A DNA stretch of 64,000 nucleotides from positions 3,534,001-3,598,000 of the forward strand of contig CP075497.1 of the NCBI GenBank assembly GCA_021613535.1. The letters run 5' to 3'. The position numbers and the translations under genes are program-made. Position 1 is the first letter of the stretch. Each line of letters starts with the position of its first letter. The notes beneath the pieces were generated by a model. The model made no database searches. It saw nothing but the letters and a program-made list of their open reading frames with translations, and was not told the DNA's origin. The DNA is from Adineta vaga (lineage: Eukaryota; Animalia; Rotifera). This document shows, one piece after another, positions 7,252 to 15,342 of this stretch.

Positions 7252-7441
7252 ATGATTGAACGTTTGTCATCGTTGCCGCCGTCGCCGTCTTTTCATGCCA
7301 TAATAGAGCAGAAAAACGACACCGATCAGTCGACAATAGATCAAACAATATTAAGTAAGTATCGATGATGTATATTCATTTGATAGTAGTATTTAAACCT
7401 TGAATATTTTACGACAGGTTTATTATCAAAGAAAAGTGAAA
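7252..7441 (+). CDS. Candidate variable N-terminal module V1 of the orphan membrane-protein gene (exons 7252-7354 and 7418-7441)
   Basis: ATG ORF MIERLSSLPPSPSFHAIIEQKNDTDQSTIDQTIL, phase-1 GTAAGT donor, 63-nt intron ending ACAG, 24-nt exon SLLSKKSE, phase-1 GTAAAT donor in frame with the common exon at 13727. Confidence 0.55.
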
Positions 7442-8105
7442 GTAAATACATTTTTTCTCTTATATTTTCTGTCGTATCATATATTTATGGATACTTAAGT
7501 TTGTCTCTCTCTGTCTGTCTCTGATTCTCCCCTTCCACTTCCTTATTTTCAGTAAAACTAACAGTCTTCAATGAATATGTTAGCAAGAGACGAAAGACTG
7601 TGTTGTAATGATTAACAATGGCAGTAAGCAAGCATCAAGAACGTGGAGACGAAGAGAAAAGAGCGTTTCATAAACGCGTGTGCTTAATGAGATGCTGTTC
7701 TTGCGTTCTTTTTTTGCAAATATATATATATACGTTGCTAGCTGACGGCAGGCACAAACATAAAACCGCTTCTATTGAAATTGCCTATTGCCAAGCATCC
7801 GAACCATAGCACGATCAGTTGATGACGTAGAAAAAGAAAATCTTTTTTTCTCGTTTTTTTCTTCTATATGTGTGTCTTCATCCGTCTTTCTTCTCTTGTT
7901 CTTCTTCTCGCTCGTTGATTTCTATCAAGCTTCTATGTCTTTAACGTCTAGAAAATAGATAAACAAGATAGAATAGAAGACCTTGTTATTGCTATTTCTC
8001 TTCATATTTTCTGGCTTGAGCTGATTTCTCACTTGTTGATATTTTGCCGATAACCATGTGTTTCGTAATTACTTACACCAATCAACACTGTTATTGGGAA
8101 TAGCA

Positions 8106-8681
8106 ATGCAATTATCGGCGGTTTCGCCGATATCGAAAACATATTCACGAACAATGAAAACGACTCATCTATTGATTCAAGTAGGTATTTTAACTAGAAT
8201 GGATGATAAACGTTTTTATTCATTGTTCTATGTATCTTTATGTACATACAAGTCTCGATGTCTAATGACCTTTAGCTGGAAATCGTATATGTAATTTACT
8301 ATTGTGACAGTTAAAAGATTTACATATCCTTCATGATACTTATTCAATTCATTGTCTTCTTCTTCTTCCTCTTCTTCGTTTTCAAGGAAATGATAATTAC
8401 GTAAATGAGAGAAGTGATGTTAAGATGAAAAGATTAAGAGTTCTACTTCCTTCTCTTGTTCTTTCATTTGACAAGAGAAACGATTGTTATTCATTGTATC
8501 TTTTACTAACTATGAAGATTTGATTCATTTATTTTTTGTTAGGTAGTATCCAGTGAGACATTAACACGATTAATAAACCGTGAACGGTTCATTGTACTAC
8601 AGCCACAATGTGTAATGCGTGCATTTCAAATATGTATTTATCTGCCACCATTATATGACGATCCGTGGCTTATATTCAAAG
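8106..8681 (+). CDS. Candidate variable N-terminal module V2 (exons 8106-8180 and 8543-8681)
   Basis: MQLSAVSPISKTYSRTMKTTHLLIQ|GTAGGT (phase 0); TTAG|VVSSETLTRLINRERFIVLQPQCVMRAFQICIYLPPLYDDPWLIFK-g|GTAAAT (phase 1); open throughout. Confidence 0.5.
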
Positions 8682-9733
8682 GTAAATTGATCTAACATAT
8701 CATGTATGCTTCCCTATTAATGTCAAATAAAAAGAAACGTTAGAAGAGAGTTGAAGTATATTGTTTGCTTTTAAATAATAAATAAGTTATAATAGAGTTT
8801 CTTATTAAATATTCTTACGTTAGAAAACTATGGTATCCTATCAACAACACATCAATTTCACTTTCTCGAATGATTTGATTGCATAAGAATCGAATAGATC
8901 TTTCAACGTTAAATCAATATTCTTTCTCACTCTATCAAAATATCGTAGTAGTTTTAACAGAAAATGATAGATAGATGAATGATATATAGATAATAATGAT
9001 TAACCGCCTACATCAGTTTCTCTTCTATATATGTTTCCAATTCAGATGATAATCTCACCATGCATATATAACCTTAGTTCGTCTACTATGATTTTTCTAT
9101 GATTCTGCTAGCAATTAGTGCTTGCTGTCGTTTTGTGACACATCTTTATTACTAGTTTTGTTGATTAACGATAGAAATAGTCTTTGGAATTATGTTTATT
9201 TGTTTGTTTATTAATCTTTAATAGTCGCCGATCATCCCTTGTTACTATTTATTATCTTGTCTAGATAGTTTAGTTTGTTATTATAGTTCAGATGGAACGA
9301 CAGACGTCAAGAAAAGAAATAAAAGAAAACACTTGTCGTTTGTCGCCTAAAGACGATGGTGTTATCATATCATAATTCATGAGGTATTGATTAATCTATT
9401 GGGCAGAGAAAGTCGATCAATCTATCGAAAAAACATTGGTATATATACTGTTATTTCTATCTATGGAGAAAAAACAAAAAACAAAGAAATAAGAGATAGC
9501 CGGATAACGCCTATATTCTTCTTCGTTAAGCTTTCATCATTAAATCAAGAAGAGGCAGATGTTGTAAGTGATAACGAGACGAAGAAGGAGGAAATATTTG
9601 TCAGTCTATCACAGATATTCAATCCTCATTTCGGCAAGTGTTTCTTTGTATACATATATATATATATACAAAAGATTTATACAATGTTAGTATCAATGTA
9701 TTGACAAATATATCAATTAATTCGCATATATTT

Positions 9734-9824
9734 ATGATTATGATCGGTACGATAAAACAAAAGTGGAATCGTATAACAAAACTTTTCTTAACAATATGTA
9801 TTATACATGCTATTATTGAATATG
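9734..9824 (+). CDS. Candidate variable first exon V3
   Basis: MIMIGTIKQKWNRITKLFLTICIIHAIIEY-g|GTAAGT; 91 nt, phase 1. Confidence 0.5.
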
Positions 9825-10789
9825 GTAAGTTAACAAAAAAAGAAAAAACTGAATTTGTCTATTGGAAATTAGGAGAACATGTTATTATGTTTGATTCTTC
9901 TGTCTACTTAATTATGGACAGATAATTTCGTTTAGATTTGTTTTCAAGGTTATGTTAATAAATCTACATAAGGAAAGAGATATTTCTCGAGAGAATTAAC
10001 GATTTTCCTAGGAAATTCATCAGTCTATACAAATCGAACGGATGTATAGATTGTGCAATGCTCACAGAACAAACAATTCTATATGTCACATATGAATCTT
10101 TATTATAATAAAATGATTCTTAATAGATATTTCTTCAATAGAATTTTCGGAACAATTAATAATATATAAACAAGAATGACATTCTCTGTACATTATCATA
10201 ACTAATTATGATCAATTTTCCGTTTTCTTACTCTCTTTAGAACAAACGAAATGATAGAGTCTAGACTAGCTAAATGTAGATGTTTTCTAATGTTCACTTA
10301 GGATCGTTACTATGATGTAAGATCTGATATAGATTATCTCTTAGCCTCGAACTTTTGTCATTGACATTTGCTTCTGTATCCCGTATGACTAGAAGAAATG
10401 AATCAATCTGTTAAGTCATATTGTTTATATCTCTATTTTATTGATCTTTAGATCTCCTAAACAGAAATTCATCTTTTCTCTTTTAATCCATTCAATTTGT
10501 CTATAGTATTCTTTAGTTATTTGATTTATCACTAATAAAACTGTATTGACTATACAGATTATTTTTATGTACGACTAACTACAGTATGATGTGTTTGTTT
10601 GCGTACTGAAAGAGAGAAAAAAAATGGATGCACACGTCATCAGAAGATATGTGTTCGATACAACTATACGTATATGTGCGCATGATCGAGAAAACGTTTA
10701 TTTGATGACATCATAAATCGTAGTGTCCACAGTTGCAGAAAGCAGAATTGCCGGACGGGCGTTTTATACCTCATTAATCGTTCTCGCTT

Positions 10790-10925
10790 ATGTTGAGCTT
10801 CAGTGTTTTATCATTTTTGTTCATCATACCCATTTCTTTGACGAATATTGTTGTTAAAGAAACGGATGATTATGTTGATATGACAATTGGAATTTTACAT
10901 GATTCATCTGAAGAAGATTTAACTG
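10790..10925 (+). CDS. Candidate variable first exon V4 (signal-peptide-like)
   Basis: MLSFSVLSFLFIIPISLTNIVVKETDDYVDMTIGILHDSSEEDLT-g|GTAAGT; 136 nt, phase 1. Confidence 0.55.
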
Positions 10926-13041
10926 GTAAGTTTCATATCTTTATGTTTTTCTTTTCCTTCGATCGTTGAACAGTATTTGAAACGACTTTTTGCAATAATC
11001 ATTATGCGAATCAATCATTTCTAATTGTTTTACCAATGACACAAAAAAAACAGAAACTATTTTTGTTATTCTTCTTCTTCTTATCGATGATATAAAGATA
11101 TTTGAATTCAATATTATGTTTAAAACACGAGAGAACAGAAGAATAAATATAAATATTATTTACATAAATAACAAACAGGTGTGTTTATTATCATCATCAA
11201 AGAGTGATGATGAATGTAAAACAAATATGAAAAAGAAATCGTGTTTTGTTTTTTGTCAGAAATCAAATTAAATAAAAATATGTAATCGATAGTCTTGAGA
11301 AGAAGATGAAATTATAATAATTCTATTTGACAGCTGACTGTCAAGATTCCCCTAAGAGATAATAGTTGAAGAAAATGAACACATTTATATAATTATCTTG
11401 GAAAGTTCGGTTCGTTTTTTCTTTTTTTCGAATGAAAGATAAATGTATTGATTATGTAGAAGTTGAAGTTTGAATAAGAAAAGAAAAGACATATGTAAGT
11501 TAAATCCCAGATAGTAATGATATTATGATATTAATCTGATTTGATTAAGACGATTATGTTCGAAAAAAGATTATTGTAAACTTCGAGAAATATACAGAAT
11601 GAAAGATCACAAGTTTTTATTAGAGAAATAGGGAAAACCAATGTGGTTTTTGATCATATACTAAATATAGAGAAAAGCGAGGTTTTTTTTAGAAGTACAT
11701 GGTAAGATAATATTAAACAAAAGAAGATTTATTTGTGTAATATGATAATCTTTGAAACACAATCATTTCTGTCTTTACTTCGTCTTCTATTAGTTCTATT
11801 ATGAACACATTCTTCTTTTTGCAAATTCAATAATCTCTTCTCATTTGAAACAGATAGAAATCTAAATGGATATCCAGACGAAAAAAATATAGCAGAACAA
11901 AATAGTTTATCTATCTATGATTGCTTTCGATTTGTTTTCTTTTCATTAACACGCGAAATCGAAAATAATGATCGAGTATAACTGGAAATAATCGCTATAT
12001 AATGATAGAAAATCAAACTTGGCTTGTTTTTCATCACTTGATGATTGACTTGACGTTTTCTCACCATACTGTCAGTTAGTTGTTCTTTTGGATTTAACTT
12101 TACTCATACTCATGTGTGAACGAAAAAGAAAACGGTGAACATTATATACATGTTTACATAATGTTTCGCAATGAGTTATGTTTTTTAATTCAGTTTATGT
12201 CAATAGATGATGAGCAAATGATATTTTTTGCTTTCGTCAAATAACTAATGTAAACGTTTTTCACTTGTTTGAAAAAGAAAAGAAATATTCAAAACAATTA
12301 TGCATAATACTCGATCAATAGCATTCGAAAGTGTGATATAAATATGAATTTCGTGTGAAAAGTTGAAATATTGACCTTTTAACATTGATTTCAATCTGAC
12401 AGGAGAAGCACGTTCATGTTCATCTCTATCCACTACTTGTGTTATAATATTAATTAATCGAGTATGCGCATACAATATGTATTGTATTAATTGCTCAATT
12501 CTATTTATCGATTACTTGTCGAGCAAGAAAAGGTCGTCGTCTCTCTTTCGATCAAATATGTTCATCATCTGGAAGAATTTGATGACGACTTATTTTCCTA
12601 GATGATTGTAATCACAACAAAAAAACATTCTTTTTGATAATGTCTGGATGTGCTCACGCGAAGACATGGGATATTAAGGGTCATTTCTATGTACATCTAT
12701 ACATATCATAAACATTGCTATAGATTCACTCATCTTGAATTCATCGATAAGTTTGATTCGCTTTTCTTCTTCTTCTTCATTTTTTTTTCGTTTTCTTTTT
12801 CTTCTCTCAACACATACGACATACGTTCGTCCAAAAAGAGAAGGAGAGAGAGAGAGAGCACTCTGTTGTATATATGTATCTCTATCAAAACACATGTGTA
12901 CACTAAAAGTAGAAGAATCGACCGAGAGAGAGAGAGAGAAGAGAGTGCGCGCGTTGTTTCTCATTTATACATACGTATATAAATATATACATTGAGAAAA
13001 GAGAGCAGAAGTAATTCAGTAATCAGATCGATTTAATCGTC

Positions 13042-13222
13042 ATGACTTCAAGTATTAATTATGTTCGTAAATCAACATTATGGAAATTAATTACGAGTGA
13101 ACCGTTTTATATTCTTATACCTAATCTATTCATTCTTCGTCCAGCAAGATTTTTATTAAATTATTATATTAAGCCCGCAAAATTTCTAGTCATTGTACTT
13201 CCACGAAACATTTGGCAAAAAG
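13042..13222 (+). CDS. Candidate variable first exon V5 (basic/hydrophobic)
   Basis: MTSSINYVRKSTLWKLITSEPFYILIPNLFILRPARFLLNYYIKPAKFLVIVLPRNIWQK-g|GTAATC; 181 nt, phase 1; preceded by a GA-rich tract at about 12838-12945. Confidence 0.6.
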
Positions 13223-13726
13223 GTAATCAATCTGCTTACATTATGCGCACCAGTTGTTTAAGATTCGATATTGATGAATGTTCCATATGTCGCAGATCTT
13301 TTTTCTTTTGTTATTTGGCCAATCATTCAGGTGTAGCTAATACTGACGAGAATATAAAGATCAAGATCGTTTTTTGATACATTGAAGAAAACGATCCTAT
13401 CCTTGGAATCAATAATCATGAGAAAGTTAATTAGATAATAGAGAGAAGATTTAGCATGATGCATTATTCATTGATCATTTATAAACATGCGTTCAGTCTT
13501 TTGATTTCTTTCTCTCTTGGCCTGTCTACATGCTAAATAGATGCAATGATCATTTATCATTTGAGCTCTTGTCATCTTCAATATACATATCTATAAATAT
13601 GAATATCTACAGGGAGAAAAAGAAGAAAGAGCAGATGTATGAAAATAAAACTTGTTATTTATATGAGAATTATGCAATGTGAAAAGAATAGATCCGATAC
13701 CAGATTTACATTTGAAATTATTTTAG

Positions 13727-15342
13727 TTCGTCGAAATGAGACAATATGTTGTCTAATTGGATTTGGTATTGGTGTGGGTTGTTGTATACTTTATCGTCTT
13801 ATATCAAATTTTCTTGCTCCTACTTCAACTTCATCATCATCATCAACAACAACATCTATCTCAGCTAATACTTTATCGTCTTTGTCAAACAATAAACGTG
13901 ATGTAAGCAACAACTCTCATTTACCGCTTCTAATGAATCTAGAACATGTTTGAAAAGAAAAAAGGTCAACTAATAGTTTCATGCTTTTTTTCTTTTCTAT
14001 TTCGAATAGGCAAAAGCAGCACATATGGGTCAAGAACATTCATCATTTTCTTCCAATGGAAATGAAATAACTGTTACATATACAAAACGACCACGTTCAT
14101 CAACAAGTTCAAAACCAACTCTACCTGTAACTCATCACAATGCAACAGCAATCAATCGATCGCAACATCAATCCTATGCGAATGATTCAGATCGTGAACC
14201 ATTACTTGGTTTACCAATTGATAAACATCATGATTATATTCCAAATAAAACTTTTACTACCAGTCATTTATCTGATGAAATGACATGGTCAGAAATGTCT
14301 TCATCGTTAGGAACAGTTGGTTTATTACAAGACTCTTATCATTCCAATTCATTAACGGGTGATTCTGGTGTTGATTGTCAAGAAATTTCAACAATACGAT
14401 CATCTCGTAATCAACAACGTCTTCATGATCTAACGACAACATCAATAACAGCAGCAGCAGAAACTAATCCAATATCAATTATTGATGATGATGATGATGA
14501 TGACGATGAATCGATGATTAATTATTCAACTAATGAAACTAATACATTATATTCAGGTTCAAGAAGATATGATTCAGATACGGCGCTTAGCCGTGGTGTC
14601 ATACTGCAAGATACACGTAAATAAGTTTTAATTAATAAATCATTCATCTAATTAACAATCGTTTGTTTTTTAAATTTTGATTCTTTAGAAACAGCTACAG
14701 AATCACATGTGATGTCATATATGTCGACAGAGAAAGGTTTAGAGCGAGCATTAGAACAAACAAGTCGATTCTATTCTGATCTTGAACATATAGCTACTGA
14801 TTTAAGTACTCTATCCAAACGATATTCTCAATCTCAAATGTCCATTTCACCATCATTATCGAAATATTATCATCAACACAATCGACCAGTATTTAATACA
14901 ATCGATGCACTTGATTGGGATTGGCATGATATTCATTCACCACCTCTAATGCAATCACCAAAATTATTTCAACGAAAACAGTATTCATCATCTTCATTAC
15001 CACGTTTAAATCAAATGTCGATGAAAAACAAAGTTCGAAGAAAATTAAATCAGACAACTAATCAAACAGAATATCATGAATCAGATTTAGAAATGCGTAC
15101 AACACATTCATATGATTGTACAAGTTCGCCATTAAAACGAAGTAAATTGAAAAGAATATTTCTTTAAAAAAAAAGGAATTTATTATTCTCGTCATTTTCT
15201 AGGACCAAGTTCAGTTTATTTTGACTCAACAGATAATACAAGTGGTGATGAAAATTTCGGAGATGAAACACTTCAAATTCCTTCCTCGCCAACGGTGCTA
15301 CCTTCCTCAAGAACGACCGAATTTTTTTCGACTACTAAATAA
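13727..15342 (+). CDS. Common exons of an orphan single-pass membrane protein (TM segment, Ser/Thr-rich disordered region, short coiled coil, LIR-like and FFAT-like motifs)
   Basis: Exons 13727-13902, 14010-14616, 14689-15141 and 15203-15342 join in frame via GT-AG introns; TM ICCLIGFGIGVGCCILYRLI. The 3' end is uncertain because of a possible extra intron at about 15295-15370. Confidence 0.75.

What the first reader, a model, noticed from the sequence alone, without database searches (positions are those of the whole stretch)
7252..13902. Array of at least five alternative N-terminal modules spliced to one common transmembrane exon
Seen: the apparently empty 6.5 kb between VPS45 and exon 13727 holds five ATG-initiated open modules (7252-7354+7418-7441; 8106-8180+8543-8681; 9734-9824; 10790-10925; 13042-13222; a weaker sixth at 7608-7623). 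Each ends in a GTAA-type donor in phase 1, the phase required by the acceptor at 13726. The N-termini differ sharply: hydrophilic (V1), Ser/Thr/basic presequence-like (V2), basic plus hydrophobic (V3), signal-peptide-like (V4) and long basic/hydrophobic (V5). Known analogy: variable-first-exon loci such as plectin, UGT1A and clustered protocadherins. Inference: promoter choice could direct one cytosolic tail to different organelles or topologies. Caveat: I searched for phase-compatible exons, so there is selection bias.
Basis: partly seen in the sequence, partly recalled or inferred. Interest (0 to 1): 0.8.

Follow-up and report, generated by a model that had tools for sequence, protein, structure and literature searches.

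The report
Four alternative first exons, one membrane gene
An uncharacterised rotifer membrane-protein gene (Adineta vaga) starts from at least four different first exons, each giving the same protein a different short front end, and this layout is conserved across bdelloid rotifers and in both duplicated copies of the gene.

Summary
The window is Adineta vaga chromosome 6. The gene is I4U23_028364, annotated with one start only. Modules V2 (8106-8180 + 8543-8681), V3 (9734-9824), V4 (10790-10925) and V5 (13042-13222) are real alternative coding first exons. All end in phase 1 and all use the single acceptor at 13726/13727.

- **V2 and V4:** RNA contigs from A. vaga carry the exact joints 8180>8543, 8681>13727 and 10925>13727.
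- **V5:** it is transcribed in A. vaga, but its joint was not seen there.
- **V3:** it was not covered in the four runs laid.
- **Conservation:** all four modules keep ATG, open frame and phase-1 GT donor, in the same order, in A. steineri and Rotaria. The A. vaga chromosome-3 ohnolog keeps V2-V4 and only a broken V5 remnant.
- **Spliced mRNAs elsewhere:** intron-free environmental mRNA contigs carry V2-, V3-, V4- and V5-type starts. One V2-type and one V5-type contig are 100% identical downstream of the joint.

V1 is unproven and V6 is rejected. V1's first piece is intact only in Adineta, its mini-exon is not conserved, and no V1-type mRNA was found.

The idea that the front ends send one tail to different membranes or topologies fits their conserved composition, but it was not tested. 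This is a new member of a known kind (a variable-first-exon locus) in a bdelloid-restricted family without Pfam domains.

The parts
7252..7354 (+). V1 first piece: candidate fifth first exon, unproven
   Evidence: It has an ATG, 103 nt (phase 1) and a GTAAGT donor. The frame is intact with an in-frame 15-nt deletion in A. steineri. A 1-nt deletion gives stops in Rotaria. It is absent from the B-type loci. No V1-type protein or mRNA was found. This stretch was not covered by the reads call.
7418..7441 (+).
   Evidence: The homologous stretch in A. steineri and Rotaria changes phase or carries stops.
7560..7830 (.). Conserved non-coding block upstream of the V2 transcript. It includes the rejected V6 (7608-7623).
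   Evidence: Column identity is 82% across three genera, and the indels are not in threes. The ATG and donor of V6 are lost in A. steineri. There is no Rfam match. A promoter or enhancer role is inferred.
7919..8105 (+). 5' UTR of V2 transcripts
   Evidence: A. vaga RNA contigs begin at 7925 and 7994. The V2-type mRNA L015 aligns from 7919. The stretch contains a short upstream ORF.
8106..8180 (+). V2 exon 1 (ATG, phase 0, GTAGGT donor)
   Evidence: Joint 8180>8543 is seen in runs X1 and X2. The exon is conserved in L012, L013, L008 and on C3. dN/dS is 0.05.
8543..8681 (+). V2 exon 2 (ends in phase 1, GTAAAT donor)
   Evidence: Joint 8681>13727 is seen in X1 and X2. mRNA L015 breaks at the same positions. 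dN/dS is 0.06-0.07.
9734..9824 (+). V3 first exon (basic start, then a strongly hydrophobic 15-mer; phase 1, GTAAGT)
   Evidence: It is intact with a G|GTAAG donor in A. steineri A, Rotaria A, A. vaga B and A. steineri B. V3-type spliced mRNAs L018-L020 align to 9737-9824 and then to 13726 onward. It had no cover in the four A. vaga runs laid.
10648..10789 (+). 5' UTR of V4 transcripts, with a conserved element of about 70 nt
   Evidence: RNA contigs start at 10648 and 10659. The element is conserved in both ohnologs and in three genera.
10790..10925 (+). V4 first exon (signal-peptide-like; the only start annotated in A. vaga)
   Evidence: Joint 10925>13727 is seen in X1, X2 and X6, from two studies. 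It equals residues 1-45 of P0017. It is conserved in all loci examined.
11116..11215 (+). Extra phase-1 ATG-to-GTAA ORF: chance
   Evidence: It was found by the mechanical count. It has no protein-level match at the homologous place in L012 or L013.
13042..13222 (+). V5 first exon (60 codons, basic and hydrophobic; phase 1, GTAATC)
   Evidence: An A. vaga RNA contig covers 13014-13198, but no joint was seen. V5-type spliced mRNAs L017 and L021 align to 13017-13215 and then to 13725 onward. The exon is 65-77% identical in A. steineri and Rotaria, with dN/dS 0.31-0.36. A V5-like exon is present in Didymodactylos.
13639..13726 (+). Open frame with ATG running into the acceptor (a rival start)
   Evidence: The upstream peptide and its ATG are not conserved between loci. 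Conservation with the ohnolog starts at 13721. An unspliced contig covers 13635-13785 in run X5, whose RNA nature is unknown.
13727..13902 (+). Common exon: RRNET plus a transmembrane helix plus a Ser/Thr-rich linker. It is entered in phase 1.
   Evidence: It is the acceptor of all the joints. Fifteen of its first 34 residues are invariant across the 16 aligned proteins.
14010..14611 (+). Constant exon 2 of the tail
   Evidence: tblastn of P0017 and alignment of the mRNAs.
14689..15141 (+). Constant exon 3 (predicted helical region and a W-acidic-like motif)
15203..15342 (+). Last coding exon with the stop codon (FFAT-like motif)

Best explanation
SHOWN. The gene I4U23_028364 of Adineta vaga is a variable-first-exon locus.
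- At least four mutually exclusive coding first exons (V2 in two pieces, V3, V4, V5) lie in a row over about 5 kb.
- Each has its own 5' UTR.
- Each ends in phase 1 with a GT donor, and no upstream exon is seen joined to it.
- All are joined to the one acceptor at 13726/13727, so the junction codon is Val followed by RRNET and a transmembrane helix.
- The row V2-V3-V4-V5-common is conserved in Adineta and Rotaria. V2-V4 are also intact in the A. vaga chromosome-3 ohnolog. A V5-like exon is present in Didymodactylos.

INFERRED.
- Each module has its own promoter, and the cap-proximal donor wins the single acceptor.
- The choice of start changes how the common helix sits in a membrane, and which membrane it sits in.
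  - V4 looks like a cleavable signal peptide with a short acidic stub. That stub carries a conserved N-glycosylation sequon in five of the six V4 sequences examined (three A-type, three B-type); the A. vaga A-type copy is the one that lacks it.
  - V3 adds a second hydrophobic helix, giving a hairpin.
  - V2 is presequence-like: net +4 to +6 over the module, and no acidic residue in the first 20-29 residues.
  - V5 is a conserved basic and hydrophobic 46-62-residue piece of unknown mode.
- The shared, largely low-complexity tail of roughly 280-430 residues carries invariant short motifs. It probably acts as an adaptor on the cytosolic side.
For: - **Phase and donors:**
- **Excess of phase-1 modules over chance:**
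- **GT..AG joints:** 8180>8543 and 8681>13727 (X1, X2), and 10925>13727 (X1, X2, X6; two studies).
- **Rough contig word depths:** V4 13-15, V2 5-8 and V5 3 add up to roughly the common exon's 26.
- **A. vaga ohnolog:** collinear V2 (two exons), V3 and V4 with ATG, open frame and G|GTAAG donors.
- **A. steineri B-type locus:** the same, plus V5.
- **A-type loci of A. steineri and Rotaria:** all modules in order.
- **dN/dS:** 0.05-0.07 for V2, 0.31-0.36 for V5, 0.43-0.46 for V3 and 0.52-0.61 for V4.
- **Census of 49 family proteins:** V2-, V3-, V4- and V5-type starts in front of the same RRNET exon.
- **Intron-free mRNA contigs of each type:**. They break at the window's predicted splice sites.
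- **One gene, two starts:** L021 (V5-type) and L032 (V2-type) are 100% identical over 1,590 nt downstream of the joint and unrelated upstream.
- **Composition of the modules across species:**
Against: - V3 had no cover in the four A. vaga runs laid, and the V5 joint itself was not seen in A. vaga.
- Contigs cannot show transcription starts, so separate promoters are inferred from where contigs and mRNAs begin, and from conserved upstream blocks.
- V3-V5 have only moderate dN/dS on very short alignments.
- No targeting predictor or experiment was available. The tail has many N-x-S/T sequons and a Ser/Thr-rich stalk, so a luminal or extracellular tail in isoforms without a signal peptide is not excluded.
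- The A. vaga A-type V4 lacks the sequon kept elsewhere.
Confidence: 0.88

Rival explanations
1. The gene has one start, and the other modules are chance ORFs picked because they fit the phase.
For: About 1.9 such modules per phase are expected by chance, and at least one (11116-11215) is a chance ORF. Only the V4 start is annotated in A. vaga.
Against: Two different modules are joined to 13727 in A. vaga RNA. Four modules are conserved with ATG, frame and donor across genera and ohnologs. mRNAs of all four types exist.
Confidence: 0.02
2. The first exons are real, but their main purpose is regulatory: several promoters for stage- or tissue-specific expression. The short peptides matter little for localisation.
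For: dN/dS of V3, V4 and V5 is only 0.3-0.6. Conserved non-coding blocks lie in front of each module. The modules are short. B-type V4 and V5 differ strongly from the A-type ones.
Against: Class features of each module are kept across genera and ohnologs while the sequence drifts: hydrophobic start in V4, basic start plus helix in V3, no early acidic residues in V2, high net positive charge in V5. V2 is under strong purifying selection, 0.05-0.07. ATG, frame and phase are kept everywhere. A purely regulatory first exon need not be coding.
Confidence: 0.15
3. A fifth start, V1 (7252-7354), is joined directly to 13727 and is used in Adineta only.
For: ATG, 103 nt (phase 1) and a GTAAGT donor are conserved. 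The frame is intact in A. steineri despite a 15-nt deletion. dN/dS is 0.45, like V3 and V4.
Against: The frame is broken in Rotaria. The surrounding non-coding DNA is about equally conserved, 67-73%. V1 is absent from the B-type loci. No V1-type protein or mRNA appeared in the census or in a pattern scan of metagenome contigs. V2 mRNAs do not contain it. Little depth is left over at the common exon.
Confidence: 0.25
4. A proximal start inside the last intron (ATG 13639, read straight into the common exon) gives an isoform with no spliced N-terminal module.
For: The frame is open from 13639. An unspliced contig covers 13635-13785 in X5. Several database models start a few codons before RRNET.
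Against: The upstream peptide and its ATG are not conserved, and many loci have no ATG there. Similarity to the ohnolog begins at 13721. The one mRNA-like example (L046) is a V5-type transcript with its short intron retained. X5 may be DNA.
Confidence: 0.1

Closest known systems
Plectin (PLEC) alternative first exons
   Same: A row of alternative first exons encodes short, differing N-terminal pieces on one constant protein. The review PMC8468861, read, says that these short N-terminal domains 'dictate their expression profile'. That plectin isoforms go to different cellular sites is my own recollection and was not checked here.
   Different: Here the constant part starts with a transmembrane helix. 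The variable pieces look like membrane-insertion or targeting signals. The gene belongs to a small family found here only in bdelloid rotifers. Four modules are shown, not a dozen.
Clustered protocadherins and UGT1A (variable exon arrays)
   Same: The splicing logic is the same. Each variable exon has a start and a donor, no upstream exon is seen spliced onto it, and all join one constant acceptor. Choice is presumably made by the promoter. This comparison rests on my own knowledge and was not checked in papers here.
   Different: Their variable exons are long paralogous copies that encode whole domains. Here the modules are 30-71 codons, and no significant similarity between them was found. 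One weak V2/V5 local similarity is not confirmed by hhalign. No promoter element shared between modules was found: the conserved element in the V4 5' UTR matches nowhere else in the window.
D-AKAP1 (AKAP1) N-terminal splice variants
   Same: An N-terminal anchor is changed by an alternative 5' piece, which switches one adaptor between membranes (mitochondria versus ER). This is from my own knowledge and was not checked here.
   Different: There is no sequence relation. Here there are four variants, and the localisation is untested.
Tail-bearing cargo adaptors with W-acidic motifs (calsyntenin-1, SKIP, vaccinia A36)
   Same: The architecture is a single N-terminal membrane anchor with a long tail, probably disordered. 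An invariant Leu-Asp-Trp-Asp stretch fits the 'tryptophan flanked by acidic residues' rule given in PMC6214655. The Orthopox A36R cluster is among the nearest ESM Atlas neighbours, but at 0.76, below the useful range.
   Different: There is no homology and no binding test. Motif matches of this length are common by chance.

Membership tests
Variable-first-exon (alternative promoter) locus | Two or more alternative 5' exons, each with its own start codon | tested here: met
   V2, V3, V4 and V5 each start with a conserved ATG.
Variable-first-exon (alternative promoter) locus | All variable exons join the same constant acceptor, and mRNAs carry one of them only | tested here: met
   Joints 8681>13727 and 10925>13727 are seen in A. 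vaga. mRNAs of each type carry a single module. L021 and L032 share an identical downstream part.
Variable-first-exon (alternative promoter) locus | Each variable exon has its own transcription start or promoter | tested here: inconclusive
   Contigs and mRNAs begin 28-190 nt upstream of each ATG and never contain an upstream module. Conserved blocks precede each module. Contigs cannot prove a start.
Variable-first-exon (alternative promoter) locus | The arrangement is conserved in relatives | tested here: met
   The order is the same in the A. steineri A and B loci, the Rotaria A locus and the A. vaga chromosome-3 ohnolog. A V5-like exon is present in Didymodactylos.
Protocadherin/UGT1A-type array | The variable exons are paralogous tandem copies | tested here: not met
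   Pairwise scores equal shuffled scores except V2/V5 (z 4.5) and V1/V3 (z 3.8). The profile comparison of V2 against V5 gives E 0.38.
Cleavable signal peptide (V4) | An N-terminal hydrophobic core, followed by a polar region on the luminal side | tested here: inconclusive
   The best 15-residue Kyte-Doolittle window scores 2.05-2.63 and starts at residues 1-6. An N-x-S/T sequon sits at residue 37-38 in 5 of 6 sequences. No signal-peptide predictor was available.
Mitochondrial presequence (V2) | A positively charged, Ser/Thr-rich N-terminus without acidic residues, able to form an amphipathic helix | tested here: inconclusive
   Net charge is +4 to +6. The first acidic residue is at position 21-30. 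Ser plus Thr make up 24-32% of the first 25 residues. The maximum hydrophobic moment is 0.53-0.63. No TargetP-type predictor or experiment was available.
W-acidic kinesin light chain-binding adaptors | Trp flanked by Asp or Glu in a disordered cytosolic stretch, which binds the KLC TPR domain | not testable with these tools
   The motif is invariant in 15 aligned proteins. The rule is taken from PMC6214655. Binding was not tested.
FFAT-motif VAP-binding proteins | A core like E-F-F-D-A-x-E with acidic or phosphorylatable flanks, which binds the VAP MSP domain | not testable with these tools
   An invariant Ser-Ser-Val-Tyr-Phe stretch, followed by near-invariant Ser and Asp, lies near the C-terminus. 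The consensus is recalled from memory and was not scored.
Any Pfam or PDB family (whole protein) | A significant profile match | tested here: not met
   Pfam gives nothing above its cut-offs, exon by exon and for five full-length relatives. The family profile has no PDB match at E up to 1. Only 16 representatives were found in 1.84 billion proteins. Every hit that carries an organism name in the related search is a bdelloid.

The most novel reading that the evidence does not exclude
By promoter choice, one bdelloid-specific gene places the same adaptor tail on several different membranes or in different topologies. The anchors would be a signal-peptide type I form, a two-helix hairpin, a presequence-bearing form and a basic/hydrophobic form. 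The tail carries W-acidic-like, FFAT-like and Trp-x-x-Ile/Met motifs. The gene would then act as a general organelle-to-motor or organelle-to-ER linker, with its cargo set by the first exon. The layout has been kept since before the bdelloid genome duplication.
Probability: 0.2. Interest if true: 0.7.

Novelty: new member of a known kind. Interest (0 to 1): 0.5.

Why it matters
- **Annotation.** Bdelloid reference annotations give this gene one start per species, and a different one in different species. They therefore hide a conserved four-way N-terminal choice. The locus shows that the intergenic-looking 6.5 kb after the Sec1-family (VPS45-like) gene is coding and regulatory.
- **Test case.** It is a compact case (30-71-codon modules, one acceptor) for asking how promoter choice and cap-proximal donor selection work in a bdelloid.
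- **Selection.** The array survives in both ohnologs, which argues for selection on the alternatives themselves.
- **Cell biology.** If the front ends do set membrane or topology, this would be a clear case of one tail being distributed over several compartments from a single gene.

Tried and rejected
- **V6 (7608-7623):** rejected, because its ATG and donor are not conserved.
- **V1 mini-exon (7418-7441):** rejected as a conserved coding piece.
- **Extra candidate 11116-11215:** a chance ORF.
- **Proximal ATG 13639 as the true start:** not conserved. The database models of this kind are intron read-through, and L046 is a V5-type transcript with a retained intron.
- **V2/V5 paralogy:** single-sequence z is 4.5, but hhalign gives E 0.38.
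- **Non-coding RNA in 7560-7830:** no Rfam match and no covariation support with three sequences.
- **mir-320-like hit at 12787-12855:** E 0.13, far below the gathering score, so chance.
- **Pfam, PDB profile and ESM Atlas:** no family found.
- **Pattern scan of metagenome contigs for the conserved 3' end of V1:** no hit. This is weak evidence, since the pattern had to match exactly.
- **Papers on bdelloids and alternative first exons:** nothing relevant.
- **Structure prediction** was not run. The modules are short membrane pieces with shallow alignments, and the tail is low-complexity and looks largely disordered.


Full report
**Where we are.** The window is contig 6 (3,534,001-3,598,000) of a 100.8-Mb, six-contig assembly. 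The protein search names the gene I4U23_028364 of Adineta vaga. This is P0017, 503 aa, on a 13.9-Mb contig. Its chromosome-3 ohnolog is I4U23_014456, P0035. P0017 maps to 10790-10924, 13727-13902, 14010-14611, 14689-15141 and 15203-15339, with the stop at 15340-15342. The reference annotation therefore knows only the V4 start.

**The observation.** Every listed module is present, starts with ATG, has a length of 1 mod 3 and is followed by GT. The common exon is entered in phase 1 and encodes RRNET, a transmembrane helix and a Ser/Thr-rich linker.

- Six are in phase 1 on the + strand, against 0 and 2 in the other phases and 1, 1 and 0 on the - strand.
- About 1.9 per phase are expected in shuffles (P about 0.012).
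- The six are V1's first piece, an internal-ATG version of V2 exon 2, V3, V4, V5 and one extra ORF (11116-11215).

**RNA in A. vaga.** Only one reads call was allowed, with at most 6,000 bases. I laid 7901-13900, which leaves V1 out. I used four runs from three studies.
- All records are Logan contigs. The GT..AG joints show that they derive from RNA.
- The joints are 8180>8543 and 8681>13727 in X1 and X2, and 10925>13727 in X1, X2 and X6.
- V2 contigs begin at 7925 and 7994. V4 contigs begin at 10648 and 10659.
- A 185-nt contig covers 13014-13198 (V5) without reaching the donor.
- V3 has no cover.
- Contig word depths are a rough measure only: V4 13-15, V2 5-8, V5 3 and the common exon about 26.
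- The cut of the common-exon contigs at 13808 coincides with the simple Ser-codon repeat. It looks like the tool's repeat skipping, but 13808 is not among the repeat-cut places the output names.

**The ohnolog.** The chromosome-3 locus is collinear from the Sec1 gene to the tail. Outside the exons only short blocks align. Inside it I found three modules:
- a two-exon V2 with the same exon 1 / exon 2 break and a G|GTAAAT end;
- V3 with G|GTAAGA;
- V4 with G|GTAAGT.

All three have an ATG and an open frame, and they stand in the same order. Similarity to the window starts 6 nt before the acceptor. A V5 remnant there has an in-frame stop.

**Other species.** I searched with exon 3, by reference, and then with the A. 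ricciae protein that this search returned. The two searches gave 49 family proteins, and every one that carries an organism name is a bdelloid.
- In front of the same RRNET exon their N-termini fall into V4-type, V5-type, V2-type and V3-type groups.
- There are also read-through artefacts and models that begin at an internal Met.
- Genomic loci of A. steineri (A and B type) and of Rotaria sp. Silwood1 (A type) keep the order Sec1 - V2 - V3 - V4 - V5 - common (V1 is dealt with below). ATG, frame and phase-1 donor are intact for V2-V5.
- dN/dS against A. steineri and Rotaria is 0.05-0.07 for V2, 0.31-0.36 for V5, 0.43-0.46 for V3 and 0.52-0.61 for V4. It is 0.18-0.22 for the common exon.
- These are short alignments, and A-type non-coding DNA also aligns at 67-73%. 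The ohnolog and B-type comparisons are therefore the more telling ones.
- Didymodactylos has a V5-like exon 1.1 kb upstream of its annotated start, and a weaker V2-like hit.

**Spliced mRNAs of every type.**
- Intron-free contigs from JGI metatranscriptomes and from Logan encode full proteins with V2 (L015, L016), V5 (L017, L021), V3 (L018-L020) and V4 (L026, L023) starts.
- Aligned to the window, they break at 8180/8543, 8681/13725, 9824/13726 and 13215/13725.
- L021 (V5-type) and L032 (the same JGI contig as L015; V2-type) are 100% identical over 1,590 nt from the joint onward and unrelated before it. This is one gene with two first exons in one organism.
- The V2 mRNA's 5' UTR is collinear with 7919-8105 and contains no V1.

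**V1, V6 and the proximal ATG.**
- V1's first piece keeps its ATG and GTAAGT donor in three genera. It is intact in A. steineri, but a 1-nt deletion gives stops in Rotaria.
- The mini-exon is not conserved as coding.
- No V1-type product was seen. I give V1 about one chance in four.
- V6 is rejected.
- The open frame from ATG 13639 into the acceptor is not conserved. The database models of that kind are read-through, and L046 is a V5-type transcript with a retained short intron.

**What the modules look like.**
- V4 has a hydrophobic 15-mer at the very start, then an acidic stub. An N-x-S/T sequon sits at residue 37-38 in five of six sequences, but not in the A. vaga A copy.
- V3 has a basic start and then a strongly hydrophobic 15-mer. 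With the common helix and a five-residue loop this would form a hairpin.
- V2 has net charge +4 to +6, no acidic residue before position 21-30, and is Ser/Thr-rich.
- V5 has net charge +5 to +8 and is moderately hydrophobic and proline-rich.

These class features persist while the sequences drift. That is the basis for inferring different insertion or targeting. No predictor or experiment was available.

**The tail.**
- It has no Pfam or PDB relative.
- The alignment of 15 proteins shows several invariant short stretches. These include a Thr-Trp-Ser-Glu stretch followed by serines, Ser-Tyr-His-Ser-Asn-Ser followed by Asp-Ser-Gly, and a helical stretch.
- A Leu-Asp-Trp-Asp stretch fits the W-acidic rule of PMC6214655. 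A Ser-Ser-Val-Tyr-Phe stretch followed by Ser and Asp resembles an FFAT core.
- These motifs are leads only.

**Comparison with known systems and method note.**
- The splicing logic is that of variable-first-exon loci. Plectin is the nearest in kind, with short N-terminal pieces from alternative first exons (PMC8468861).
- The locus is not a protocadherin- or UGT1A-type array of paralogous exons.
- Database searches were made exon by exon, by reference, or with database proteins.
- I did not submit a joined model of the window's gene to any search or folding tool.
- Inside local scripts, exons were joined to check phase and composition. Joined V1 and V2 peptides were among the local tblastn queries.

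**Verdict.** This is a real and well-conserved feature that the A. vaga reference under-annotates. It is a new member of a known kind. Four modules are proven or strongly supported, not five. The functional meaning is open.

Noticed in passing
window 7560-7830: A non-coding block is 82% identical between A. vaga, A. steineri and Rotaria. This is higher than the coding V3 and V4 modules. Its indels are not in threes. It lies just upstream of the V2 5' UTR, so it may be a promoter or enhancer. It has no Rfam match and no covariation support.
   Followed up: partly
window about 10690-10760: An element of about 70 nt inside the V4 5' UTR is conserved in both ohnologs, in three genera and in an environmental mRNA. 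It is read in different frames in different gene models, so it is conserved as DNA or RNA and not as protein.
   Followed up: partly
window 14025-14042: An internal Met followed by Gly-Gln-Glu-His-Ser is kept, with conservative changes (Asp for Glu, Gln for His), in all A-type proteins seen, including Didymodactylos. It fits the N-myristoylation pattern as I recall it. Several database gene models start there. An isoform without the transmembrane exon is conceivable but untested.
   Followed up: no
window 11101-11500: Run X1 shows contig cover here, with loose ends of 255 letters at 11235 and 11411 that match nothing in the laid stretch. There is no GT..AG at these points. This may be a repeat or a foreign transcript sharing a piece.
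   Followed up: no
G000 C3:11538946-11539036 (L007:8946-9036): The chromosome-3 ohnolog has a V5-like remnant (ATG and a GTAATA donor) with an in-frame stop. V5 therefore seems to have been lost from the A. vaga B copy, while A. steineri B keeps a short intact V5.
   Followed up: partly
window 13635-13785: Run X5 (another organism label, another study) holds a 151-nt contig that runs unspliced across the acceptor. It may be pre-mRNA, DNA in the run, or a proximal start.
   Followed up: no
window 14010-14270 versus C3: The B-type (ohnolog) proteins lack about 100-150 residues that the A type has after the transmembrane exon. The missing part includes the internal Met motif and a Glu-Pro-Leu-Leu stretch that resembles an acidic dileucine signal.
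   Followed up: no
L042 (metagenome contig Ga0209617_10059823): This is a more distant relative of the transmembrane exon (59% identity, starting Lys-Arg-Asn-Glu-Ala). It may come from a non-bdelloid, and could show whether the family extends beyond Bdelloidea.
   Followed up: no
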